Below are positions 1 through 9,775 of a stretch of 64,000 nucleotides of DNA, one piece after another. A model generated the notes under the pieces. It was not told the DNA's origin, did no database searches, and was given only the letters and a program-made list of their open reading frames with translations. How positions within the stretch are numbered: position 1 is the stretch's first letter; every line of letters begins with the position of its first letter. The stretch lies in IMG/VR virus record IMGVR_UViG_3300028558_000016, positions 1 through 64,000 of that record; one strand, written 5' to 3'. A program made the position numbers and the translations under genes.

Positions 1-308
1 TAAGTGCCCTCTTCTAAATCTAAGAATTTGTTCCAGGACCTAATAAGTCCCTCTATGTTGTCCTTGCCGACACTGTTTGCACTATGGACGTTTATGTCCA
101 CGTTCCTGAGATCGTATTTCATCTCATGGATCATCCACTTGACGCAATCGTATCCTGTTGGTATTCCGTCTCCAAGGTCATGGTCGAATGACATTTCGTT
201 TGGAAGTCCTTTGTCAATTATAACATTCTTGAACTCCTCAAAGTTTCTCACTATGGTCCATCCCTCAAAAAATGGAATCCTTTCGTCATCCAAATATAGC
301 TTGTACAT
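1..308 (-). CDS. Cyclic-phosphate processing receiver domain protein (cREC-like); stop codon straddles window edge
   Basis: Not in the ORF track. Manual translation: MYKLYLDDERIPFFEGWTIVRNFEEF...EMSFDHDLGDGIPTGYDCVKW...VHSANSVG. The LYLDDxR, SFDHDLG and VHSAN motifs are typical of this RNA-repair-associated receiver family. Confidence 0.75.
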   Translation of the reverse strand, partial: MYKLYLDDERIPFFEGWTIVRNFEEFKNVIIDKGLPNEMSFDHDLGDGIPTGYDCVKWMIHEMKYDLRNVDINVHSANSVGKDNIEGLIRSWNKFLDLEEGT

Positions 309-496: not shown

Positions 497-1039
497 TTAA
501 TAATTTTTTAGCTTATGAATATCTTCAGGTCCGTTTAGCACAACCCAATCTCTGTCCTTAAACACAAAATGAATTGTAAGCTTTATGTCAGGCCTCTTCG
601 TCCACAGCTCAGTGAAATTCTCAATGTGTTCGATCATGTCATCAAAGAATTCTATCTCCTTAACGTCAGGATAATGCTCATCGATTATTCTTATCGCTCG
701 GTCAACCTTCTTTTTCCCGTCATACTTCAATGAATGGTGATGGAAATAAAGCTTGTTCTTCTCGAGTATTGGCATGATGTTTGGCTTTAGCCTATACATC
801 CTGTTTGTCAACACAACCTTTGCTGCAGTGTAATCCTCAGTTGCACGCATGTAATGAGGAAGTATACACTCCAACGGTTTAATGTTGAATTCAGGCATGA
901 GGCTTTCCCATCTACCCCACCAACCATTATGAGGATATGGAACACCTTTAATCCTCTCGTATTCCTTCTTCCCTTCATCGGGAAGAGGAACATCGAGAAG
1001 AGTGCCGTCCATGTCAAATATGTAAAGTTTTGTTATCAT
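497..1039 (-). CDS. HAD-family phosphatase, Swiss Army Knife RNA-repair-like HAD
   Basis: N-terminal FDMDGT motif, GWWG segment, C-terminal FFDD motif; adjacent to an RNA ligase. Confidence 0.75.
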   Translation of the reverse strand: MITKLYIFDMDGTLLDVPLPDEGKKEYERIKGVPYPHNGWWGRWESLMPEFNIKPLECILPHYMRATEDYTAAKVVLTNRMYRLKPNIMPILEKNKLYFHHHSLKYDGKKKVDRAIRIIDEHYPDVKEIEFFDDMIEHIENFTELWTKRPDIKLTIHFVFKDRDWVVLNGPEDIHKLKNY

Positions 1040-1065: not shown

Positions 1066-2487
1066 TTAAACAATTACATTATAGCCTTTGATCAAATCGT
1101 TGTACAATTCTTTACCATCGAAATCCATCATGTATCTCTTAGAGCTTTTTGGACCTCCGATGAAATCAAAGAAGAACCCTTGGTGCTTCTTCAACTTTCT
1201 TTCTACAACAAATCTCATTACTTTTGCTGCCAACTTCTTTCTCAAGTTGGTCGCAGTTTCATCGCCTCTGTCGGAAGCACATTCTCTTATAGAAGATATT
1301 TCATCACGAGTGAATCCCAGCTTCTCAAAATCAACTGTGTCGATCTCAGCGATGTCTTTCACGTGAGTCAATCCAAGCTTAGCAAGAACATCTGCTCTCA
1401 AACCTCTCGATTCAAAAGTGATTGCATCCTTGTGCTTTCTGTATTCAATGAACTCCTCGTAAGTGGAAATTTCAGAAGTCAACTTGTCAATTTCTTTTAA
1501 AGTTCTCTTCCATCCTTCTTGCAAGTGTTCAATCTCTTCTCCTCTTCCTGGGAAAGTCGCCTTGTATTCGTTCACGTTGTCCTCACCAGATCTAACGATG
1601 TCGATCAATCTCCAGAACGCAGTTGAGTCCTTGAAGAAGTGGATTGCACAGTAAGCTGGATTCTTCATTTTTACACGAGGGTATCCAAACTCAGTATGCT
1701 TTCCATAATCACAAACAACATAACCTTCCTCACGGTAAGTCATGCCATCGAAAGACTCTTTCAATTTATCTGGAGAAGAATTCAATGCAAGAGTTGGAGC
1801 CATTGGCACACCAAGATCTTTTGATATAATCTCAAGATCAACGAAAGAAACTTCTTCCAAAGTATCAAGCTTTCTTGCACCCAACAAATAGACAGCACTG
1901 TCTTGGTGTGGTGTAACAACAATGTTGTACTTAGTACAAAGCTCAAACGCCAAAGTATATCCATCATATTTCTTAAACAAAGCTTTTACCCACTCAGTTC
2001 TAAGATCACAATGTTCCATCATTCTCACATCGTCATCTTCTCTCTTAACAGTCTCCATGAAAGCGTGAACGAACAAATCCGAGAATGTTCCTCCAAGCTT
2101 AGTATAGTGAAAGTTATCCACATCACCTTCTCCGTTAGCAGTTCCAGTTGTTCCGAAGCAAACTTCTCCTGTAACGTAATCAGTGTAAACGTGAATCATT
2201 GTTCCATCCATCTTTTTGAAGATCCTTGCAGACTCCCAGTTTATAGGTGCTGCGTGTCCTTCTCCAAGGTTGAAGAATTTTCTGAATGCAATGGACATAA
2301 CTCTCCAAGTATCTTTCTCAACTACAAGTCCTCTCGCATCTCTAACTTCCTCGTTAGTGAAGTTGGATTCGATAGAATCGTACTTAAGCAATACCTTGTG
2401 AGGATAGTCCTTGTGCTTCAATTTGAAGTCAGCAAGAGTCTTCTCAAGACCGTGCTCTTTTAGGTATTTTGTTATTGCGAGTTCCAT
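1066..2487 (-). CDS. rnl1: T4 Rnl1-like RNA ligase with C-terminal extension
   Basis: EVRDARGLVVE, AFRKFFNLGE, motif I KMDGT, AFEL, EEGYVV, RVKMK. Confidence 0.85.
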   Translation of the reverse strand: MELAITKYLKEHGLEKTLADFKLKHKDYPHKVLLKYDSIESNFTNEEVRDARGLVVEKDTWRVMSIAFRKFFNLGEGHAAPINWESARIFKKMDGTMIHVYTDYVTGEVCFGTTGTANGEGDVDNFHYTKLGGTFSDLFVHAFMETVKREDDDVRMMEHCDLRTEWVKALFKKYDGYTLAFELCTKYNIVVTPHQDSAVYLLGARKLDTLEEVSFVDLEIISKDLGVPMAPTLALNSSPDKLKESFDGMTYREEGYVVCDYGKHTEFGYPRVKMKNPAYCAIHFFKDSTAFWRLIDIVRSGEDNVNEYKATFPGRGEEIEHLQEGWKRTLKEIDKLTSEISTYEEFIEYRKHKDAITFESRGLRADVLAKLGLTHVKDIAEIDTVDFEKLGFTRDEISSIRECASDRGDETATNLRKKLAAKVMRFVVERKLKKHQGFFFDFIGGPKSSKRYMMDFDGKELYNDLIKGYNVIV

Positions 2488-2498
2488 TTCAAATATGA

Positions 2499-3023
2499 TT
2501 AGTAATGTTTACTTTTTCTTTTCTTTTTTCTACAAACAAGGTCAGCAGCGCAAGAAGCCGCGTAGGCATCTGGCTTTGATCTTACCCTGTATCCGGCAGC
2601 TCTTATGAATCCCATTCCAGAATCGTAAGCAATGTTGCTTTTCCATCTTGGATTTGGATTCAAGTCAAGGTCGATGTCAACAAGCTTCTCCATTGGAGAA
2701 ATTCTTGCATAAACCCCTTCAAGCTCCTTTTCAAGGTATTCGCCAACAGCGAAAGCTCGTTCAACTTCGCCCCAAAGCTTTGAATACATGTCCTTAGCTC
2801 TTGGAACGTTGTCAATACTGAAAATGTAGTGGGCACCTGCACCAACGTGGTATACAAGAACAACCGTTGCATAACGTGTCTTGTTTTTTTGATGCTCGGA
2901 GTCACATCCAACATAGATGCGGATTCCGTTTGGTGATGTGGACATGTGAGTCTTGATGTATTCCCTCATGTAGATACCGAGGTCATCAATGAATGCACCG
3001 CCAAATTTTTTAAAGTTTTTCAT
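2499..3023 (-). CDS. RNase H-like YkuK/DUF458 family protein
   Basis: IYVGCDS, GAGAHYIF, KLWGEV, DIDLDLN and KPDAYAASCAAD motifs. Confidence 0.8.
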   Translation of the reverse strand: MKNFKKFGGAFIDDLGIYMREYIKTHMSTSPNGIRIYVGCDSEHQKNKTRYATVVLVYHVGAGAHYIFSIDNVPRAKDMYSKLWGEVERAFAVGEYLEKELEGVYARISPMEKLVDIDLDLNPNPRWKSNIAYDSGMGFIRAAGYRVRSKPDAYAASCAADLVCRKKKRKSKHY

Positions 3024-3355: not shown

Positions 3356-3646
3356 TTAAAATAATCCATTCTCGAGTATGTCAACGTGTTTCTTCAAAAC
3401 ATCTCCGTGACAACTTGACGGTTTGCACCAACATCCTAAAGTTTTTCCTTTTAATTCTCCCAATCGATCCATCAGGTCTTTATTGTTCAAAAGGTATTCC
3501 TCGTATTTTTCAATTGCTTCCTTTCTCGAGGAAACCTTAAACTCAGCAAGAGTTCCCTCTTTATGAGAATAAGGATTTCCCCAAATGGAAGGACGTCCAA
3601 TATAGACGTCGTACTTATCTTTCTTACAGTGGACAACTTTACACAT
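3356..3646 (-). CDS. DUF4326 domain protein
   Basis: VVHCKK..DVYIGRPSIWGNPY...LKGKTLGCWCKP..CHGDVL. Confidence 0.85.
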   Translation of the reverse strand: MCKVVHCKKDKYDVYIGRPSIWGNPYSHKEGTLAEFKVSSRKEAIEKYEEYLLNNKDLMDRLGELKGKTLGCWCKPSSCHGDVLKKHVDILENGLF

Positions 3647-3657
3647 TAATTAATTTC

Positions 3658-4347
3658 TTATGCGTGCAGCTGTCTAATGTTTCCCTTGTACAACTCCTTG
3701 ATGGTTATTTTTCTTCCTGTTACGTGATCAAGAACAAAACCATCCTGTTCTCTGTAAGTTCTTCTCTTGTCGTTTCTGTTTCCATAACCGATTTGATTGA
3801 ACCTCGTCTCTTTCACCTTGGCACCTATCGCACCATCATTAATGTCCTTGAGCCTTTCTTCAAGTCGTGCCCAAGCAGTCTCTTCATTTTTTTCTCTGGT
3901 CCTGTGCTCTTCAACTCTCACTATCATTCCAGTTGGAATATGAGTCAACACGCAAACAGTTTCTACCTTGTTTCGGTTTTGACCGCCGTTACCAGATCCA
4001 CGAGTGTACTTTCGATGCACGTCGTTTCTATTTAAGACAAATTTTGGTTGGGAGTTTTCTTCCATTACAGCTACCGTCACGGTGCTGGTCTGTACTCTTC
4101 CTCTCTTTTCAGTTGGAGGAACTCTTTGCCATCTATGTCCGCCTGATTCGTTCTCAAAGAACTTCCTGACTCCGTTTCCAGTCAGTCATAGCGAGACATA
4201 ACCTGGCATTCAGTGTTCTACTGCAGAAGCAAATTGATTGATGCTTGCGGCCTTTTGATAAATGTCCGCCATTTCATTGACGAGGAGCTTTGCATCTTCT
4301 CCTCCTTCTGCTGCTCGAATTTCGAGCTTGATCTTTTCTGTTTTCAT
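3658..4347 (-). CDS. Short class I peptide chain release factor (RF1/PrfH-like, 229 aa) with two in-frame TGA codons (4210-4212, 4186-4188)
   Basis: Manual translation from ATG 4347: [22 protein letters not shown]...[52 protein letters not shown]...TRGSGNGGQNRNKVET. The RF motifs EIRAxxGG, ESGGHRxQRVP (PxT) and GGQ lie in one frame; the track ORF 3658..4080 is only the 3' part. Confidence 0.85.
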
Positions 4348-4427: not shown

Positions 4428-5015
4428 CTACTTAAGTTTCTTTTTCTTTGTCAATTCTATTAATTTCTCTCTTGCCAATTGTTGTTCAACATAATCAGCG
4501 ATAATTACTATAGTTGAATCGCTTATCCACATGTGGCTTCTTCCGTTCACAGTAAGAGAAAAATCTCCATCACTTGGATCAAGAACAACCTCTGTTATCT
4601 TCTTGATTGGATTGTGCTTCTCTTTATCTTTCGCATCTCGTTCTAACGAGAATTTTGCCATTATGTCGCTGTTCCATTTCTTTGCATTTTTCTTGCTTTC
4701 TCCGGTGTAATTGAAATACTCAACATATTCTTTCAAAGGATTTCCTCCGTTTGCATTATTCAAACCACCTTTTAAAGTGTTTGCGTCTTCCATAATGACG
4801 TTTAAGTTTGTCCAGTCCTTCACCTTCTTCCAATTCTTATTCACATACACCTTCGCACATTCAGCAACTATTTGCATTGCTGCAATGTGTTGTCTATATT
4901 CGTTGTAGAAATTAGATGTCACAGAAAATTTTGAAGATTGCACTGTCTTTTCGTTTTCCTTGTCAGTCATCGAAACCGGGCGCATCATCATTCCATATAT
5001 CTCATTCTTTTTCAT
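4428..5015 (-). CDS. Hypothetical protein
   Basis: 195 aa ORF with phage-like codon composition. Confidence 0.7.
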   Translation of the reverse strand: MKKNEIYGMMMRPVSMTDKENEKTVQSSKFSVTSNFYNEYRQHIAAMQIVAECAKVYVNKNWKKVKDWTNLNVIMEDANTLKGGLNNANGGNPLKEYVEYFNYTGESKKNAKKWNSDIMAKFSLERDAKDKEKHNPIKKITEVVLDPSDGDFSLTVNGRSHMWISDSTIVIIADYVEQQLAREKLIELTKKKKLK

Positions 5016-5271
5016 CTTCTTTTATTGTTAGGTCGATTTCTACTATCTTCCATGTCAAACATTCTTCGAGATTCTCCACAAAAACAGGATGAACCTGATT
5101 ATCTCCTTTTTCTTTTCTCAACCAAACACCTTTGTTCCATTGAGAAACCCACCAGCCTATAGTTCCATCTGGTGCTTTAACTTTAATTTTATTTAAACCG
5201 CCAAATCCTTCAGGAAGATCAGCAATGGTTTTTATCTCCTTGCCTTCAAGAATTATCTTTTTGTTTTTCAT
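5002..5271 (-). CDS. Hypothetical protein
   Basis: 89 aa ORF directly downstream of the last tRNA. Confidence 0.65.
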   Translation of the reverse strand: MKNKKIILEGKEIKTIADLPEGFGGLNKIKVKAPDGTIGWWVSQWNKGVWLRKEKGDNQVHPVFVENLEECLTWKIVEIDLTIKEDEKE

Positions 5272-5297
5272 AAAAGTAAATGTAATAAAAAATTTTG

Positions 5298-5370
5298 AGC
5301 CGATGACAGGGATCGAACCTGCGACCTCCTCTTTACGAAAGAGGCGCTCTACCAGCTGAGCTACATCGGC
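5298..5370 (-). tRNA. tRNA-Thr(CGT)
   Basis: GCCGATG acceptor, GCTC/GAGC D-stem, CCTCT-TTCGTAA-AGAGG anticodon arm, GCAGG-TTCGATC-CCTGT T-arm. Confidence 0.95.
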
Positions 5371-5374
5371 AAAT

Positions 5375-5457
5375 GAAACCGAGCTTTTATTTAGGGACTT
5401 AAGGCAGGTTGCTCTGCTCTGATATTTGCCCAGGAGAATCTTACTCCTATCGGTTTC
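5375..5457 (-). ncRNA. Candidate structured small RNA (element D) in the tRNA array
   Basis: 8-bp closing stem GAAACCGA/TCGGTTTC enclosing the hairpins TAGGAG/CTCCTG and GGCA/TGCC. Confidence 0.4.
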
Positions 5458-5547
5458 TCATGGCTTGTCGTCCTGAAACATTTTGTATACAAGCCAACCC
5501 ATCACAATAACTGCAATGACAATAACTATGTAACAAAATATATCCAT
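5458..5547 (-). CDS. 29-aa single-TM micropeptide
   Basis: Manual translation MDIFCYIVIVIAVIVMGWLVYKMFQDDKP*, lying between RNA genes. Confidence 0.45.
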   Translation of the reverse strand: MDIFCYIVIVIAVIVMGWLVYKMFQDDKP

Positions 5548-5548
5548 G

Positions 5549-5634
5549 TGCAGTAGGTGAGATTCGAACTCACAACCCCCTGATTGGAAGTCAGGTGCTC
5601 TATGCTTTCGCGTCCAATTAGGAGCTACTACTGC
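5549..5634 (-). tRNA. Atypical tRNA with TCC (Gly) anticodon, enlarged D-loop, Lys/Arg-like body
   Basis: GCAGTAG/CTACTGC acceptor with A73, 21-nt D-loop containing GC-GAAA-GC, anticodon arm CCTGA-CTTCCAA-TCAGG. Confidence 0.8.
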
Positions 5635-5660
5635 AAGTGCGAACTTTCCATCGCATTAAT

Positions 5661-5720
5661 TGGAGCAACCTCAGTTAACTGATTCGCATTTCTGCGAGGG
5701 GGGAGTTAACCTCTGGTTGC
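5661..5720 (-). ncRNA. CCA-ended hairpin RNA (element A)
   Basis: GCAACC..GTTAAC..TCGCA-GAAA-TGCGA..GTTAAC..GGTTGC-T-CCA. Confidence 0.6.
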
Positions 5721-5725
5721 GTAAT

Positions 5726-5773
5726 TGGAGCCGAGGGGCCGTTCTCCAACGGTGAGTTCCCTTTCAACTCGGC
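5726..5773 (-). ncRNA. CCA-ended hairpin RNA (element B)
   Basis: GCCGAG..GGG..CCGTT-GGAG-AACGG-CCC-CTCGGC-T-CCA. Confidence 0.6.
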
Positions 5774-5778
5774 ATGTG

Positions 5779-5869
5779 CGGGGAAGATTGGAATCGAACC
5801 AATTAGTTTGATTTGCAGAAGACATTCTTTTTAAACAGAATGGTGCTCAGCCACCCGAGCATCTTCCCC
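5779..5869 (-). tRNA. Aberrant tRNA (Cys GCA-like remnant) with inserted hairpin; possible pseudo-tRNA
   Basis: GGGGAAG/CTTCCCC acceptor, GCTC/GAGC D-stem, ATTGG-TTCGATT-CCAAT T-arm. The central region has a CATTCT/AGAATG hairpin followed by CT-GCA-AA-TCAAA-CTA. Confidence 0.6.
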
Positions 5870-5874
5870 TTTTA

Positions 5875-6057
5875 TTATTTTCTCTTTCTCTCTTCGTCTA
5901 AATATCTATCATGTTCGTCTTTTGAATAGATCTCATAGTAACCACATTTTACTTTGTAATAAAATGGTGACATGTATTTCCATTCCTTGTTAACATCAAT
6001 GAATTTAGATTTTTCTAAAATCTGATTTTCCTCATCCGTCGGTTTGATTGTAATCAT
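5875..6057 (-). CDS. Hypothetical protein
   Basis: Track ORF 5875..6120; the in-frame ATG at 6057 (MITIKPT...) is the likelier start. Confidence 0.5.
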   Translation of the reverse strand: MITIKPTDEENQILEKSKFIDVNKEWKYMSPFYYKVKCGYYEIYSKDEHDRYLDEERKRK

Positions 6058-6195
6058 CGTTTTGTTTTTAGTTATTAAATAGGATGGGAAAACTTTAAGC
6101 GATAGTCTTTCGACAGGCAAGTTATTTTTTCATCGATGATTGATCAAGTCACCTCAAAATAAAATACTTTTCTACACTTCAGCACTTTCCCTCTG

Positions 6196-6268
6196 AGCGG
6201 AAAACGGGGCTCGAACCCGCGACCTTAACCTTGGCAAGGTTACGCTCTACCAACTGAGCTATTTCCGC
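6196..6268 (-). tRNA. tRNA-Gly(GCC)
   Basis: GCGGAAA acceptor, U73, TAACC-TTGCCAA-GGTTA; canonical cloverleaf. Confidence 0.95.
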
Positions 6269-6269
6269 A

Positions 6270-6400
6270 TGGTGCAGTGTAATTAAAAGGGTTGGACTTA
6301 TCTTCCATTCGTCAATGGCTCTTACCAACTTTCGATGTCACGATTAATTTTAAGCGCAAAACGATTCTATTGTCGAATTTTCTATTTGCGCCGACACTGC
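6270..6400 (-). ncRNA. 131-nt multi-stem RNA with 7-bp acceptor-like stem and ACCA end (element C)
   Basis: GCAGTGT/ACACTGC-A-CCA closing; internal stems GCGCAAA/TTTGCGC, AATTAA/TTAATT, GTTGG/CCAAC, CCATT-GACG-AATGG. Confidence 0.6.
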
Positions 6401-6407
6401 ATTTTTG

Positions 6408-6480
6408 AGCGGGAGACGAGGTTCGAACTCGCGACCTATAGCTTGGAAGGCTATCGCTCTACCAACTGAGCTACTCCCGC
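6408..6480 (-). tRNA. tRNA-Gly(TCC)
   Basis: GCGGGAG acceptor, U73, ATAGC-CTTCCAA-GCTAT; canonical. Confidence 0.95.
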
Positions 6481-6518
6481 GTGCGGACATTGTTTCGGGT
6501 ACAACGTCCAAAACCTAA

Positions 6519-6592
6519 TGGGGCCAGGATCGAACTCGCGTCCGACGAATGGAAGCTAATGAGGCCATCCAAACCGCTCATTATCGCCTGGC
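6519..6592 (-). ncRNA. 74-nt CCA-ended tRNA-like RNA lacking canonical arms (element E)
   Basis: GCCAGG/CCTGGC-C-CCA closing, TAATGAG/CTCATTA hairpin, GAGTTCGATC T-loop-like motif without a T-stem. Confidence 0.55.
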
Positions 6593-6645
6593 ATTTGTTG
6601 ATGATACACAACATTATATACCGACTGTATAAAAATGTTTTAATG

Positions 6646-6718
6646 TGACCCCGGTGGGGATCGAACCCACAACCACCTGATTAAGAGTCAGGAGCTCCAC
6701 CAATTGAGCTACAGAGTC
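6646..6718 (-). tRNA. tRNA-Lys(CTT)
   Basis: GACTCTG/CGGGGTC acceptor, CCTGA-CTCTTAA-TCAGG. Confidence 0.95.
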
Positions 6719-6748
6719 ATTTTGTTGATGCAATACGTCAAAGATCGT

Positions 6749-6973
6749 TCATTTCATGAAAAGATGTTTAATTCTTTCCATATCTACTTCAATAGTTTTA
6801 ATGTTCAACTTCTCTCCAGTCTTTTTAAAATGATCATACCAAAGTCTAACCTTTTCAGATTTTATTATCTGACCATTATAATTTTTCCTTTTCAACCATT
6901 CCTTTCCAAAATATAAAATTCGTTTTTCTGTTATTCTCGAATTCATTATATGTTTAAAAACTTTTTCAATCAT
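6749..6973 (-). CDS. Hypothetical protein within the tRNA array
   Basis: 74 aa ORF fitting exactly between two tRNAs. Confidence 0.55.
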   Translation of the reverse strand: MIEKVFKHIMNSRITEKRILYFGKEWLKRKNYNGQIIKSEKVRLWYDHFKKTGEKLNIKTIEVDMERIKHLFMK

Positions 6974-6974
6974 G

Positions 6975-7059
6975 TAGCGCTGGTGAGACTCGAACTCACA
7001 CTACCGTTAAGGAACCCGCTTATGAGGCGGGCACAATTACCACATCTGTTCACAGCGCT
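6975..7059 (-). tRNA. tRNA with CAT anticodon on a class II (long variable arm) scaffold
   Basis: AGCGCTG/CAGCGCT, A73, CCCGC-CTCATAA-GCGGG, 15-nt variable region, GTGAG-TTCGAGT-CTCAC. Confidence 0.85.
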
Positions 7060-7101
7060 ATCTCGTCTGCTTCTTTGTAGGCCCCGTACTATATCTACAA
7101 A

Positions 7102-7371
7102 TCATTTGGTGGGGCTGTCGGAAACAGCAGACTTTACTTTATTTTCTTTCTTATACGTCTTCAAGAATTCCAAAGCATTTTGCAATTCTTCGACCCTGTT
7201 CTTGTTAGAAGGAATGCTTCCATTTGCCTGTCTAACAGTCATCGGATCCGATGACGATAAATTCTTTTCAAAGAACTCTAAATTTCTTTCTTCCATTAAG
7301 AGTCTTTCTCTTAATAATTTTGCCACGTATGGCATCGGATCATATTGTCCTCTTTCTTCTTGTGTCTTCAT
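7102..7371 (-). CDS. Hypothetical protein within the tRNA array
   Basis: 89 aa ORF starting 2 nt after the CCA of the upstream tRNA. Confidence 0.6.
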   Translation of the reverse strand: MKTQEERGQYDPMPYVAKLLRERLLMEERNLEFFEKNLSSSDPMTVRQANGSIPSNKNRVEELQNALEFLKTYKKENKVKSAVSDSPTK

Positions 7372-7372
7372 T

Positions 7373-7464
7373 TGGTGCGCCCGGAGGGATTCGAACCCCC
7401 GTTGGTGTTATTCACACGTCTGATTAAAAGTCAGGACCATTCGGCCAGCTATGGGAACGGACGC
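7373..7464 (-). tRNA. tRNA with TTT (Lys) anticodon and long variable arm
   Basis: GCGTCCG/CGGGCGC-A-CCA, CTGA-CTTTTAA-TCAG, V-arm GTGT-GAATA-ACAC, GGGGG-TTCGAAT-CCCTC. Confidence 0.85.
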
Positions 7465-7478
7465 ATTTGTTTTTATTG

Positions 7479-7552
7479 TGCGCCCGGTTGGGTTCGAACC
7501 AACGACCCCCTGATTAAAAGTCAGGTGCATCTACCAGCTGAGCTACGAGCGC
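7479..7552 (-). tRNA. tRNA-Lys(TTT)
   Basis: GCGCTCG/CGGGCGC, CCTGA-CTTTTAA-TCAGG; canonical. Confidence 0.95.
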
Positions 7553-7774
7553 AAATATTTGGATATGGAAATCCTCTTGCATCTCGTATTTCAGCGAGAT
7601 GCCTTTACCGTTTATATTTCATTTTAGTTTTCATTATCATTATATTTTTTAAAAGAACAGAATACGTTTTTTACCTTTTCATTAAAATTGAAATGCTCGT
7701 TAGAGCTTGTTTGTTTTGCTGTACGTATTCTTTTTTCTTTTTAATTTCTACCACCATTCAGGATGCTTTTGTTT

Positions 7775-7880
7775 TGGCAAAGATTGGATTCGAACCAATG
7801 ACCTCTCGTTTACTTTCCTTAACAATGTTTCCATTGACGGGGATTTCAGGCGAGCGCTCTACCAACTGAGCTACTTATCC
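7775..7880 (-). tRNA. tRNA-Phe(GAA) with a 33-nt insertion after position 37 (intron-like)
   Basis: Standard D- and T-arms. Anticodon arm CTCG-C-CT-GAA-A-[33 nt including CAATG-GAAA-CATTG]-A-A-CGAG; the acceptor stem has two mismatches. Confidence 0.7.
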
Positions 7881-7908
7881 TTTTGTAATGCTGCATGCAT
7901 CCTTTTTG

Positions 7909-7981
7909 AGCCGAGAACCGGGGTCGAACCGGTGACCTTCCGCTTACAAGGCGGGTGCTCTACCAACTGAGCTATCTCGGC
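7909..7981 (-). tRNA. tRNA-Thr(TGT)
   Basis: GCCGAGA/TCTCGGC, CCCGC-CTTGTAA-GCGGA. Confidence 0.95.
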
Positions 7982-7984
7982 AAT

Positions 7985-8119
7985 TTACAAATATTCGTTC
8001 TTGTTACACTCAAAAAACAAAACCCACAACTCGTGAATTCTCTCATTCACTTCATCATTTCCATTTTGTCTCTTGTTTAACAAAGACATCAATTCGTTTA
8101 CTATGTCATCCTTTTTCAT
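7985..8119 (-). CDS. 44-aa hypothetical protein between Thr tRNAs
   Basis: Manual translation MKKDDIVNELMSLLNKRQNGNDEVNERIHELWVLFFECNKNEYL*. Confidence 0.45.
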   Translation of the reverse strand: MKKDDIVNELMSLLNKRQNGNDEVNERIHELWVLFFECNKNEYL

Positions 8120-8122
8120 TTG

Positions 8123-8195
8123 AGCCTACAACCGGGATCGAACCGGTCACCTCATCCTTACCAAGGATGTGTTCTACCAACTGAACTATGTGGGC
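8123..8195 (-). tRNA. tRNA-Thr(GGT)
   Basis: GCCCACA/TGTAGGC, CATCC-TTGGTAA-GGATG. Confidence 0.95.
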
Positions 8196-8317
8196 AATGT
8201 CTCCGATCGTAAAAATAATCTCTCAAATATTATCAAGATCATTTCCATTCTTTATTAAGCGGTCGGACACGCTACTACTAAATCCAAAAGTTGCAACTTC
8301 TGAATTTTTCATCTTTG

Positions 8318-8413
8318 AAGCGGGAGTGAGATTCGAACTCACGTTCTCTTTCGAGTTGAGGCTTATGAGGCCCTGCTGGCGTTTTGCAACTTCCATCTCC
8401 AGTCGATCCCGCA
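8318..8413 (-). tRNA. Initiator-like tRNA(CAT) with expanded D-loop and a V-arm
   Basis: T1:T72 mismatch plus GCGGGA/TCCCGC, D-stem CTGG/CCAG with long loop, GGGC-CTCATAA-GCCT, V-arm CTC-GAAA-GAG. Confidence 0.75.
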
Positions 8414-8419
8414 ATGTGT

Positions 8420-8541
8420 GCCGCTTCCTGGACCCTATCACCAGGATTTTCTTTGGACTACAGAAGAGAGATTCGCCAATTTTTTTCCATAGAATTAAAC
8501 CATATACGGCGCTTTTCTACACTCTCAACTTTCGCAAGCGG
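8420..8541 (-). ncRNA. Candidate structured RNA (element F)
   Basis: Closing CCGCT/AGCGG; internal GAGAG/CTCTC, CGCCG/TGGCG and TCCTGG/CCAGGA stems. Confidence 0.4.
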
Positions 8542-8552
8542 ACTTTTATTTG

Positions 8553-8624
8553 TAGCGGGAGATGGATTCGAACCACCGACCTCAGGGTTATGAGCCCTGC
8601 GAGCTACCCCTGCTCTATCCCGCA
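8553..8624 (-). tRNA. tRNA-fMet(CAT)
   Basis: 1:72 mismatch, three consecutive G-C pairs in the anticodon stem (CAGGG-CTCATAA-CCCTG), A73. Confidence 0.95.
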
Positions 8625-8631
8625 ATATTTA

Positions 8632-8747
8632 TTGGAACGCATACCAACTTCGCAAGAAGTTTCGGGTCAACAGTGACTCTTGTCAAGCTGCCTCCTACAT
8701 GATTGATCAAGCTCCATTCTTTCAGGGAGCACCATGGGCGGTTCCAA
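8632..8747 (-). ncRNA. Candidate structured RNA (element G), first RNA after the attenuator
   Basis: TTGGAAC/GTTCCAA closing; GCTCC/GGAGC, TGAC/GTCA and AACTT/AAGTT hairpins. Confidence 0.45.
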
Positions 8748-8782
8748 TTTTTTAATTTCAATAATTTCTTCAAAGAACAAGA

Positions 8783-8814
8783 CAAAAAAAATCCCAAACG
8801 TTTGGTTTGGGATT
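8783..8814 (-). terminator. Intrinsic terminator of the leader (attenuator)
   Basis: AATCCCAAAC-CAAAC-GTTTGGGATT 10-bp stem running into a U8 tract (the first two U also close the stem). Confidence 0.9.
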
Positions 8815-8837
8815 CGTAATTTCGTTATTAGTTAACG

Positions 8838-8933
8838 TCATTCGCACATCCCAAAACACATAGGCTTACCTTTCCCAGTTTTCGTGGTAGTAGTTGTACC
8901 TGTAGTTATTTTGAATATTTGTTGCGAATTCAT
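8838..8933 (-). CDS. Attenuator leader peptide (31 aa; Thr/Gly/Lys/Met/Cys/Phe-rich)
   Basis: ATG 8933 gives MNSQQIFKITTGTTTTTKTGKGKPMCFGMCE-TGA. It has 8 Thr codons using all four ACN; TTTGGGAT in codons 27-29 is complementary to ATCCCAAA in the terminator 5' arm. Confidence 0.8.
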   Translation of the reverse strand: MNSQQIFKITTGTTTTTKTGKGKPMCFGMCE

Positions 8934-8989
8934 GACGTTTTAATTTGTTATTCTACTCTATATACTTATCTTTGTTTCAATTTCTTTTA

Positions 8990-8997
8990 CAAATGTA
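8990..8997 (-). promoter_or_regulatory. Bacteroidota sigma70-type -7 element upstream of the leader
   Basis: TACATTTG matches TAnnTTTG, about 55 nt upstream of the leader ATG. Confidence 0.65.
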
Positions 8998-9094
8998 GAA
9001 CTTTTTTTAATAGCTTTAAAATAAATTTTTCGATGTGTGATTATTTATTCCATTGAAACTCACGTAATCTATTGAAAACTAATAGAATATAAGC

Positions 9095-9340
9095 TTAAAA
9101 TTTTGTGAATAATTTTATGATTGTATCCTTTGGATTGAATGGTTTTTCGATTGAATTGTAAGAAACGTAACTTACCTTTAAAACTTTTTCATTTTCTTTT
9201 ATGACAACGTTGCCATCAAGATCTGAATAATAAATTGCTTTTTCTGTTTCAACCTTAACACCAGTTAATGGCTCTTTTGTTTTGTTATCTACAAATAGAA
9301 TATTAAAAATCAATGATGAAGCAATAAATAGAATTTTCAT
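9095..9340 (-). CDS. CarboxypepD_reg-like domain protein with signal peptide
   Basis: VDNKTKEPLTGVKV...SDLDGN...VSYVSY pattern typical of Bacteroidota. Confidence 0.6.
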   Translation of the reverse strand: MKILFIASSLIFNILFVDNKTKEPLTGVKVETEKAIYYSDLDGNVVIKENEKVLKVSYVSYNSIEKPFNPKDTIIKLFTKF

Positions 9341-9439
9341 TGGAATTTACGTTTGTTTTATCTATGTTAAGTTTTTGAGTATTTTCGTATTAAATCATAC
9401 TTGTTAACATTATGATAATATATAAATAAACTATTCTTA

Positions 9440-9775
9440 ATGATGAAAAATATACTACTCATAGCATTCATTCTTATGAGCTCATTCGTGTTAGCTCAGA
9501 AGAAATTTGAAAAGAAATTCACAAATGGTTTGATCGAAGAAACAGGATTCTTTGACAAGACTGGTTTGAAAGACAGCGTGTGGATCTCTTACAATGAAAA
9601 AGGAATTCTAATAGGAGAAGGACACTTCTCACACGGAATTAAAACAGGAATCTGGAAGACCTTCTATGAAGACGGTAAAATAATGTTTGAGATACCTTAT
9701 GTAGAAGGACACAAAAAAGGAGAAGGCAAACAATTCAGCCAAGAAGGAGAATTGATTGCCTCTAAAGATTATTAA
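9440..9775 (+). CDS. MORN-variant repeat (YwqK-like) secreted protein
   Basis: Signal peptide, then repeats of G.W..Y.E.G. Confidence 0.7.
   Translation: MMKNILLIAFILMSSFVLAQKKFEKKFTNGLIEETGFFDKTGLKDSVWISYNEKGILIGEGHFSHGIKTGIWKTFYEDGKIMFEIPYVEGHKKGEGKQFSQEGELIASKDY

What the first reader, a model, noticed from the sequence alone, without database searches (positions are those of the whole stretch)
7775..7880. tRNA-Phe with a 33-nt intron-like insert at the canonical 37/38 position
Seen: the insert (7811-7843) sits after A37 and contains CAATG-GAAA-CATTG. Established: 37/38 is the canonical archaeal/eukaryotic tRNA intron site; bacterial tRNA introns are long self-splicing group I/II introns, which this is too short to be. 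I could not see a clean bulge-helix-bulge. Inference: either spliced by a phage nuclease plus the linked HAD/cREC/Rnl1 enzymes, or an unspliced decoy. The two acceptor-stem mismatches also allow a pseudogene.
Basis: partly seen in the sequence, partly recalled or inferred. Interest (0 to 1): 0.68.

Follow-up and report, generated by a model that had tools for sequence, protein, structure and literature searches.

The report
Insert-bearing tRNA-like gene in megaphage
A 482-kb soil phage carries a conserved tRNA-shaped gene whose anticodon loop is interrupted by a 33-base hairpin; it resembles the unexplained "introns" already reported in megaphage tRNAs, and nothing here shows that it is spliced.

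Summary
On the minus strand, 7880->7775 is a 106-nt match to the Rfam tRNA model (51.3 bits). A 33-nt insert (7843->7811) follows A37 of a CUGAAA loop and holds the CAAUG-GAAA-CAUUG hairpin. It is not an assembly artefact: independent contigs carry it unchanged.

One related phage lineage has an ortholog. There the insert is 31/33 identical, the exons 65/74 and the flanking spacers only 53-73%. The T stem shows one compensatory change, so a plain pseudogene is unlikely.

Splicing is unsupported:
- There is no bulge-helix-bulge.
- The phage has no EndA, RtcB or convincing Tpt1 homologue.
- No insert-less allele and no RNA read was found.
- The ortholog's exons would give an 8-nt loop on a 3-bp stem.
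- Two normal tRNA-Phe(GAA) genes exist elsewhere in the genome.

The linked cREC/HAD/Rnl1 genes, with a 2H phosphoesterase and a T4-like Pnkp, form a known jumbo-phage RNA-repair kit. That kit explains the linkage without invoking splicing.

My best reading (0.4) is an unspliced, non-decoding tRNA mimic. A true intron cut by an unknown nuclease is the main rival (0.3).

Lak megaphage tRNA "introns" (2019) are the precedent, so this is a new member of a known but unexplained kind.

The parts
7775..7880 (-). Whole tRNA-like gene, 106 nt (Phe-type, GAA, if the insert is placed at 37/38)
   Evidence: Rfam RF00005, 51.3 bits, full-length match. Ortholog at L013:4522-4628, 41.8 bits.
7844..7880 (-). 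5' part, tRNA positions 1-37: acceptor 5' strand, D arm, anticodon-stem 5' strand, loop CUGAAA
   Evidence: cmscan alignment and sequence. The D arm is identical in the ortholog.
7845..7847 (-). GAA triplet at positions 34-36
   Evidence: ARAGORN calls the virtual spliced form Phe(GAA).
7811..7843 (-). 33-nt insert; 31/33 identical in the ortholog and unique in the genome
   Evidence: P(>=31/33) is about 9e-4 at 70% neutral identity.
7823..7836 (-). Hairpin CAAUG-GAAA-CAUUG: 5 bp with a GNRA-type tetraloop, invariant in all three alleles
7775..7810 (-). 3' part, positions 38-73: anticodon-stem 3' strand, variable loop, T arm, acceptor 3' strand, A73
   Evidence: The T-stem pair U51-A63 becomes G-C in the ortholog, a compensatory change.
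1066..2487 (-). Context only: Rnl1-family RNA ligase, 473 aa
   Evidence: Pfam RNA_lig_T4_1, 7e-14. Nearest solved structure is T4 Rnl1. Not shown to act on this RNA.
497..1039 (-). Context only: HAD phosphatase of the 'Swiss-army-knife' RNA-repair type (weak match)
   Evidence: Pfam HAD_SAK_1, 23.4 bits against a 25.6 cut-off.
3..308 (-). Context only: cREC (cyclic-phosphate-processing receiver) domain protein. The gene runs over the contig junction.
   Evidence: Pfam cREC_REC, 3e-27. Contig ends overlap.
2499..3023 (-). Context only: PF04308 RNase H-like protein of unknown role. It is the only nuclease-fold candidate in the operon.
   Evidence: Pfam, 6.6e-22. Homologues occur in KVP40-like and huge phages. 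No solved relative.

Best explanation
This is a real, selectively maintained tRNA-shaped RNA gene inside the phage's tRNA operon. A 33-nt hairpin cassette has rebuilt its anticodon arm.

I think it most likely works unspliced, as follows:
1. It is transcribed with the neighbouring tRNAs.
2. RNase P and 3' processing enzymes trim it, because the acceptor, D and T parts still form the tRNA elbow.
3. It folds into an L-shape whose anticodon arm is an irregular rod about 12 bp longer than normal, capped by a GAAA tetraloop. The UGAAA 'anticodon' sits in a purine-rich internal loop.
4. Such an RNA cannot decode. It would act as a tRNA mimic in the conflict over tRNA cleavage, for example as a decoy or competitor for a host enzyme that targets the anticodon loop, or as a ligand of the phage's own repair enzymes.

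Shown: the gene, its conservation and the predicted fold.
Inferred: transcription, processing and the decoy role.
For: - **Conservation pattern.** The insert is the best-conserved part: 31/33 against 65/74 for the exons and 53-73% for the spacers. All variation in the insert falls in a predicted unpaired stretch, at insert positions 4-5.
- **tRNA elbow kept.** The D arm is identical and the T stem has a compensatory change.
- **Decoding parts not kept.** The ortholog has an extra G in the loop, A39->U and G43->U (3 Watson-Crick pairs left) and A73->C. ARAGORN cannot assign it an anticodon after virtual splicing.
- **Weak acceptor stem in both.** Each version carries two mismatches.
- **Redundancy.** Two canonical Phe(GAA) genes lie at 392512-392586 and 392718-392791.
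- **No splicing signal or enzyme.** No BHB and no splicing endonuclease.
- **Setting.** The gene sits beside a tRNA-repair kit, in a genome full of remodelled tRNA paralogs.
Against: - No RNA data exist, so transcription and the unspliced state are both unproven.
- The window's own version gives a perfectly canonical Phe anticodon loop after virtual splicing.
- A second gene in the same genome, Ile-GAU at 417828-417974, has flawless stems and a 73-74-nt insert at the same site. That looks more like an intron system.
- I know of no described decoy tRNA with such an insert.
- Only two lineages carry the gene, so the comparative power is low.
Confidence: 0.4

Rival explanations
1. It is a true intron. 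An unidentified phage or host endonuclease cuts at both ends of the insert. The ends are healed by Pnkp, cREC, the 2H esterase and HAD, then sealed by Rnl1, which yields a working tRNA-Phe(GAA).
For: - The insert sits at the canonical 37/38 site, and virtual splicing gives a canonical Phe tRNA with U33, A37 and A73.
- A second insert at the same site lies in a flawless Ile-GAU gene.
- A full heal-and-seal kit is encoded: Rnl1, cREC, HAD, 2H and a T4-like Pnkp.
- High conservation of the insert could reflect recognition by a sequence-specific nuclease.
- An RNase H-fold protein of unknown role lies in the operon.
- Lak megaphage tRNAs have comparable 'introns' (PMC6784885).
Against: - No BHB at any usable pair of cut sites, in either ortholog.
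- No EndA, RtcB or convincing Tpt1 in the phage.
- The ortholog would splice to an 8-nt loop on a 3-bp stem, with C73.
- No insert-less allele and no spliced joint in any contig.
- Redundant with two intact Phe genes.
- The repair kit is explained without splicing (PMC7824862).
Confidence: 0.3
2. It is a decaying tRNA pseudogene that picked up a chance insertion and has no function.
For: - Acceptor and anticodon-stem mismatches, and a degenerate anticodon arm in the ortholog.
- The gene is absent from the syntenic Thr(UGU)-Lys(UUU) interval in two relatives whose clamp loader is 69-70% identical.
- ARAGORN does not call it.
Against: - About 90% identity over 106 nt, while the adjoining spacers are 53-73% and genuine neighbouring tRNAs are 61-93%.
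- P is about 1e-3 for the insert alone.
- Compensatory change in the T stem.
- The insert hairpin is invariant in three alleles.
Confidence: 0.17
3. The conserved 33 bases act at the DNA level or as a processing signal, for example as a protein-binding site, or as a cleavage site that yields tRNA halves or punctuates the operon transcript.
For: Sequence-level conservation without covariation. Location inside a long polycistronic tRNA array.
Against: No promoter- or terminator-like site on the insert. The motif is unique in 482 kb. Nothing specific points this way.
Confidence: 0.08

Closest known systems
'Enigmatic introns' in Lak megaphage tRNA genes (Devoto et al. 2019, PMC6784885)
   Same: - A huge phage with many tRNAs.
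- An insert beside the anticodon that is neither group I nor group II, including one in tRNA-Phe(GAA).
- Inserts highly conserved among relatives.
- No Rfam family for the insert, and the splicing mechanism is unknown.
   Different: Lak inserts are 79-114 nt, and several contain nested tRNA-like pieces such as a T arm. This one is a 33-nt simple hairpin with no visible sequence similarity. The hosts differ too: gut Prevotella there, soil or rhizosphere here. Insert-less alleles are known for Lak; none was found here.
Archaeal and eukaryal protein-spliced tRNA introns (EndA/Sen endonuclease with a bulge-helix-bulge motif; review PMC4090602)
   Same: Canonical position one base 3' of the anticodon, short length, and a C32:G pair possible three bases before the 3' junction.
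   Different: No BHB (only 2 of 4 central pairs), no EndA homologue, and a bacterial-type phage: it has a sigma-70 factor, a gp44 clamp loader and an initiator tRNA with a 1:72 mismatch. The insert is also more conserved than the exons, the reverse of the usual pattern.
Self-splicing group I introns in bacterial and phage tRNA anticodon loops (PMC3984707)
   Same: They interrupt the anticodon loop of a bacterial-type tRNA gene.
   Different: Those are 200 nt or more with a catalytic core. This insert is 33 nt and gives no Intron_gpI hit even at E<=1.
T4-type tRNA repair (PrrC cut healed by Pnkp and sealed by Rnl1) and jumbo-phage RNA-repair modules (PMC7824862)
   Same: Rnl1, a T4-like Pnkp, cREC, 2H and HAD are all encoded. 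Most of them lie directly downstream of the tRNA array.
   Different: Repair reseals a single break. Removing an insert needs two precise cuts, and no nuclease for that is known.
Phage tRNAs that evade or neutralise tRNA-targeting defences (PMC10264068, PMC11464382), and T4 stable RNAs C and D in its tRNA cluster (the latter from my own knowledge)
   Same: Phage tRNA-cluster RNAs whose value lies in the conflict over tRNA cleavage, or is unknown, rather than in simple codon supply.
   Different: The known evaders keep a normal 7-nt loop with point changes and still decode. None carries a hairpin insert.

Membership tests
tRNA (Rfam RF00005) | Cloverleaf covariance-model score above the gathering cut-off | tested here: met
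   51.3 bits against 29, model positions 1-71. Ortholog scores 41.8 bits.
tRNA (Rfam RF00005) | Contiguous 7-nt anticodon loop on a 5-bp stem, and a 7-bp acceptor stem | tested here: not met
   The loop is interrupted by 33 nt. Non-pairs are C31.A39, A3.G70 and U4.U69. The ortholog is worse.
Protein-spliced (BHB) tRNA intron | Insert at position 37/38 | tested here: met
   cmscan alignment. The boundary is ambiguous by one base, and other placements change the anticodon.
Protein-spliced (BHB) tRNA intron | Bulge-helix-bulge: two 3-nt bulges separated by a 4-bp helix at the junctions | tested here: not met
   At the 37/38 junctions only C32:G and U33:A pair. A scan of all cut-site pairs found none that is shared by both orthologs and leaves a tRNA. 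The minimum-free-energy fold shows a 3x3 internal loop instead.
Protein-spliced (BHB) tRNA intron | EndA/Sen-family splicing endonuclease available | tested here: not met
   PF01974 has no match in the 482-kb phage at E<=1, while the controls ring. The host is unknown, so the host side is not testable.
Protein-spliced (BHB) tRNA intron | Exon ligase (RtcB, or a heal-and-seal Rnl/Trl1 type) | tested here: met
   RtcB is absent. Rnl1, Pnkp, cREC, 2H and HAD are present. A Tpt1-like hit of only 12.5 bits is not convincing.
Protein-spliced (BHB) tRNA intron | Spliced RNA product exists | not testable with these tools
   No RNA run was listed for the gene. The one RNA library laid has zero depth over 7774-7890.
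Group I / group II intron | Catalytic core of 200 nt or more, recognised by the Rfam models | tested here: not met
   The insert is 33 nt. No intron or ribozyme family appears in 5000-9500 even at E<=1.
Megaphage 'enigmatic tRNA introns' (Lak type) | Huge-phage tRNA gene with a conserved insert beside the anticodon that is not self-splicing and matches no Rfam family | tested here: met
   482-kb phage with 62 tRNA-model hits, a portal protein, and the insert conserved in a relative.
Megaphage 'enigmatic tRNA introns' (Lak type) | Sequence or architectural similarity to the Lak inserts (nested tRNA-like arm) | tested here: not met
   The Lak Phe, Tyr and Thr inserts in Table S6 are 79-114 nt with T-arm-like pieces. 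No such piece and no similarity here. This was a comparison by eye, not a statistical one.
Megaphage 'enigmatic tRNA introns' (Lak type) | Insert-less alleles in close relatives | tested here: not met
   An exon-only pattern found just insert-bearing copies in viral and metagenome contigs. More distant relatives lack the whole gene.

The most novel reading that the evidence does not exclude
Bacteriophages may have their own tRNA splicing pathway that does not use a bulge-helix-bulge motif. In this reading, a phage nuclease excises short, sequence-conserved hairpin inserts from the anticodon loops of the phage's Phe and Ile tRNAs. The uncharacterised PF04308 RNase H-fold protein in the repair operon is the obvious candidate. 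The exons are then healed and sealed by cREC, 2H, HAD, Pnkp and Rnl1. Maturation of these tRNAs would then depend on phage enzymes, and the precursors would be immune to host anticodon nucleases.
Probability: 0.12. Interest if true: 0.85.

Novelty: new member of a known kind. Interest (0 to 1): 0.45.

Why it matters
No protein-dependent tRNA splicing is known in bacteria or their viruses, and the "introns" reported in megaphage tRNAs in 2019 remain unexplained.

This locus is a compact, tractable example. The insert is only 33 nt, an ortholog exists for comparison, a second insert-bearing tRNA (Ile) lies in the same genome, and a complete RNA heal-and-seal kit is encoded next door.

If the insert is spliced, this would be a new RNA-processing pathway. 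If it is not, it would be a new class of tRNA mimic in the phage-host conflict over tRNA cleavage.

On present evidence it is an interesting but unresolved curiosity in an uncultured phage.

Tried and rejected
- **ARAGORN.** Does not call the gene, with or without intron mode. At a lowered threshold it proposes inconsistent introns: Ile-GAU in the window, Asn in the ortholog.
- **BHB.** A manual check and an exhaustive scan both failed.
- **Splicing enzymes.** EndA and RtcB are absent, and the Tpt1-like hit is only 12.5 bits.
- **Known RNA families.** No ribozyme or intron family over the region at E<=1.
- **Mobile repeat.** The insert and its hairpin are unique in the genome.
- **Promoter or terminator in the insert.** None.
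- **Thermodynamic stability.** z = -0.47, not informative.
- **More orthologs or an insert-less allele.**
  - The insert pattern and the exon pattern in viral contigs returned only L013/L014.
  - The exon pattern in metagenome contigs returned only the window's own contig (L029), an identical copy from another sample (L040) and the L013 lineage; the other hits are bacterial tRNAs.
  - The 3'-exon pattern found nothing in 185k prokaryote genomes.
- **Relatives reached through the clamp loader.** Contigs of the 88-89% relatives stop before the tRNA array. The 69-70% relatives lack the gene at the syntenic spot.
- **Recent paralog origin.** The closest tRNA in the genome is only 72% identical.
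- **RNA evidence.** No RNA run was listed. Laid contigs show no joint 7810/7844 and no RNA depth over the gene.
- **Orthologs of the Ile insert gene.** None found.
- **Eukaryotic-virus reading.** Rejected. Portal, gp44-like clamp loader, sigma-70 and SbcC matches, together with a bacterial-type initiator tRNA, mark this as a phage.

Full report
**Where we are.** The window is the first 64 kb of a 482,156-bp IMG/VR virus record from a rhizosphere metagenome. The GC content is 36.8%. It is a tailed phage, not a eukaryotic virus. It has a T4-type portal protein, an SbcC-like nuclease, a DnaB helicase, a DNA ligase, a gp44-like clamp loader and a sigma-70 factor. Its initiator tRNA has the bacterial 1:72 mismatch. 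The contig ends overlap imperfectly by about 140 nt, so the genome is probably circular. The genome gives 62 hits to the tRNA model, in six clusters.

**The observation.** Rfam's tRNA model matches 7775-7880 on the minus strand over its full length, at 51.3 bits (cut-off 29). A 35-nt unaligned block lies in the anticodon loop. Read 5'->3' on that strand, the gene consists of:
- an acceptor stem with two internal non-pairs, A3.G70 and U4.U69;
- a perfect D arm;
- an anticodon stem CUCGC/ACGAG with a C31.A39 non-pair;
- a loop that begins CUGAAA;
- 33 extra bases (7843-7811);
- then A38, the 3' half of the stem, a 5-nt variable loop, a perfect T arm and A73, with no encoded CCA.

The insert contains the hairpin CAAUG-GAAA-CAUUG (7836-7823). 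ARAGORN does not call the gene in any mode. It does call the virtually spliced sequence a 73-nt tRNA-Phe(GAA). The exact boundary is a model choice. A cut at 36/37 gives the same product, whereas a cut after position 35 would give a CUGAUAA loop, i.e. Ile-GAU. The sequence is not an assembly artefact. An independent JGI contig (L040) and a Logan contig of run X3 spanning 7601-7963 carry it unchanged.

**Comparative evidence.**
- One related lineage has the same tRNA array in the same order. It is contig IMGVR_UViG_3300032053_000382, held as L013, L014 and L038. Its Rnl1 is 71% identical in protein and its clamp loader 88%. It carries a 107-nt ortholog at L013:4522-4628, scoring 41.8 bits.
- Overall, 96 of 107 columns are identical. 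The insert is 31/33 identical and the exons 65/74. The spacers on either side are 73% and 53% identical.
- At a neutral identity of 70%, 31 or more matches out of 33 has probability about 9e-4.
- A third allele (L019, L041) differs only at the same two insert positions, 4-5, which lie in a predicted unpaired stretch.
- The T stem shows one compensatory change, U-A to G-C.
- The parts needed for decoding have drifted. The ortholog has an extra G in the loop. A39->U and G43->U leave only three Watson-Crick pairs in the anticodon stem. A73 becomes C and G1 becomes A, while A3->C repairs pair 3:70. Virtual splicing of the ortholog gives an 8-nt loop to which ARAGORN cannot assign an anticodon.
- The genuine tRNAs in the same array differ by 7-39% between the two phages, and their stem changes look compensatory in the alignments.
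- Two more distant relatives, with clamp loaders 69-70% identical, keep the Thr(UGU)...Lys(UUU) neighbourhood but have no such gene between them.
- No insert-less copy turned up in viral, metagenome or prokaryote genome collections. No tRNA in the genome is more than 72% identical to the exons.

The element is therefore young and restricted to one lineage, yet constrained. The constraint is strongest on the insert and on the tRNA elbow.

**Is it an intron?**
- *Structure.* At the 37/38 junctions only two of the four central bulge-helix-bulge pairs can form. A scan of all cut-site pairs found no candidate that both orthologs share and that leaves a tRNA. The predicted fold puts the two junctions around a 3x3 purine internal loop (AAA/AAG). 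Above it lie a UCC:GGA helix, a 4x4 loop and the capped hairpin.
- *Self-splicing.* The insert is far too short for that, and no intron or ribozyme family matches even at E<=1.
- *Enzymes.* The phage has no EndA-type endonuclease and no RtcB, and only a 12.5-bit Tpt1-like hit. It does encode everything needed to heal and seal RNA ends: Rnl1 (1066-2487), a Swiss-army-knife-type HAD (497-1039), cREC (3-308), a 2H phosphoesterase just across the contig junction, and a T4-like kinase-phosphatase at 327.6 kb. Exactly this combination is described as the jumbo-phage RNA-repair module that counters host tRNA-cleaving effectors (PMC7824862). The linkage therefore needs no splicing to be explained.
- *The missing step.* What is lacking is any enzyme for two precise cuts. 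The only nuclease-fold protein of unknown role nearby is the PF04308 RNase H-like protein at 2499-3023.
- *RNA data.* No RNA run holds the gene. The laid contigs show neither RNA depth over it nor a 7810/7844 joint.

**A point in favour of an intron system.** The same genome has a second gene with an insert at the same site. This is Ile-GAU at 417828-417974, directly after a normal Ile-GAU gene. Every stem is flawless, and 73-74 extra bases include a CACGG-CUCAUAA-CCGUG mimic of an anticodon arm. The two inserts share only the octamer AAUGGAAA, which could be chance.

**Verdict on mechanism.** The conservation pattern is strict for the insert and the elbow and loose for the anticodon stem, the loop length and the discriminator base. 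The genome also holds two intact Phe(GAA) genes. Together these fit a non-decoding tRNA-shaped RNA that works unspliced better than a decoder, and I give that reading 0.40. A genuine intron removed by an unknown nuclease and joined by the repair kit remains plausible (0.30). A neutral pseudogene is disfavoured by the conservation (0.17). Other roles take the remainder. Only the gene, its conservation and its predicted fold are shown. Transcription, processing and function are inferred.

**Comparison with what is known.** The closest precedent is the set of "enigmatic", "highly conserved" introns reported in Lak megaphage tRNAs, including a tRNA-Phe(GAA) (PMC6784885). Those inserts are 79-114 nt, and several contain nested tRNA-like pieces. 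Insert-less alleles exist for them, and no mechanism has been shown. A pattern scan of IMG/VR suggests insert-bearing tRNA-model hits may be widespread in viral tRNA clusters. Of the 70 loci it returned, nine were checked with Rfam. Each holds a 99-122-nt hit of 43-55 bits lying among other tRNA hits. This locus is therefore a new member of a known but unexplained kind. It is not a member of the BHB intron family or of the group I/II families.

**Limits.** There are only two lineages and three alleles. The host is unknown and there is no RNA. I could not retrieve the ~95% relative present in run X7 over the gene itself.

Noticed in passing
window 7373-7464(-), 5778-5869(-), 6974-7059(-); genome 124757-124843, 386605-386692, 387507-387591, 413915-413998, 414375-414464: Normally short (class I) tRNAs occur as extra copies with a long variable arm and a Ser/Leu-like D arm, most next to a normal copy. 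These are Lys-UUU, Asn-GUU, Met-CAU, Glu-UUC, Gln-UUG, His-GUG and Trp. The long Lys copy is 67% identical in the relative L013, so it has diverged far yet is still recognised as a tRNA there. Lys, Glu, Gln and Asn, His are the classic anticodon-nuclease targets (from my own knowledge). The huge phage LR756508.1 has an Arg-UCG with a 26-nt variable arm.
   Followed up: partly
genome 417828-417974 (+) = L012:6829-6974: A second tRNA gene with an insert in the anticodon loop: Ile-GAU with flawless stems and 73-74 extra bases at 37/38. The insert contains a CACGG-CUCAUAA-CCGUG hairpin that mimics a Met or Ile2 anticodon arm. The gene lies 3 nt after a normal Ile-GAU gene. No ortholog was found in viral contigs.
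   Followed up: partly
window 5549-5611 (-): A 63-nt tRNA-like gene without a D arm, with a CUUCCAA loop (UCC). It scores 31.8 bits, is 90% identical in L013 and has a fully compensated T stem there (GUGAG/CUCAC becomes AUCGG/CCGAU).
   Followed up: partly
genome 358020-358092(-), 368276-368349, 374278-374351: Three tRNAs with a CUA anticodon (amber suppressors), which hints at TAG recoding in part of the genome. The ORFs in this window look intact under the standard bacterial code.
   Followed up: no
L049, L050, L056, L065, L067, L071, L078, L089, L099, L111 and others (positions): A recurrent family of ~110-122-nt tRNA-model hits in the tRNA clusters of many IMG/VR contigs. The anticodon arm is replaced by a hairpin followed by an 'ACAGCAA'-like motif. 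No Rfam family other than tRNA matches them.
   Followed up: partly
L055, L064, L068, L069, L085, L095, L097, L103, L105 (positions): Another conserved viral tRNA-like family of ~100-122 nt. Its internal segment has 'GGTGAAGGACC...GGTAAA' motifs in place of a normal anticodon arm, and most copies end in CCA.
   Followed up: no
L088:3122-3235 (-): In a 133-kb viral contig, a 114-nt tRNA-model hit (54.5 bits) with a UCA (opal-suppressor-type) loop and an insert of about 40 nt in the anticodon loop.
   Followed up: no
window 1-308 with genome 481451-482156 (L045): The contig ends overlap imperfectly by about 140 nt inside the cREC gene, so the genome is probably circular. A 174-aa 2H phosphoesterase with two HxT/S motifs follows, with weak matches to 2_5_RNA_ligase2 and Acb1. 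This extends the repair operon across the junction.
   Followed up: yes
window 7376-7539: A 168-nt contig from a peat metatranscriptome library (run X12) is identical, apart from a 2-base insertion, to the stretch spanning the long and the normal Lys-UUU genes. This may be a precursor transcript of a close relative, but DNA carry-over cannot be excluded.
   Followed up: no
window 3658-4080 (-), 3356-3646 (-): An RF-1-domain protein of 140 aa and a DUF4326 protein lie between the tRNA array and the repair genes. From my own knowledge, the size of the RF-1-domain protein suggests an ArfB/ICT1-like peptidyl-tRNA hydrolase. Together with the repair genes this would make the block a translation-rescue neighbourhood.
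   Followed up: no
L123:12940-13660; L128:9680-11040: More distant relatives keep a reduced version of this tRNA array. In L123, three of the four tRNA-like genes found (Lys-UUU, Lys-CUU, Gly-UCC) are the long-variable-arm type. In L128 a Pnkp-like gene directly follows the array.
   Followed up: partly
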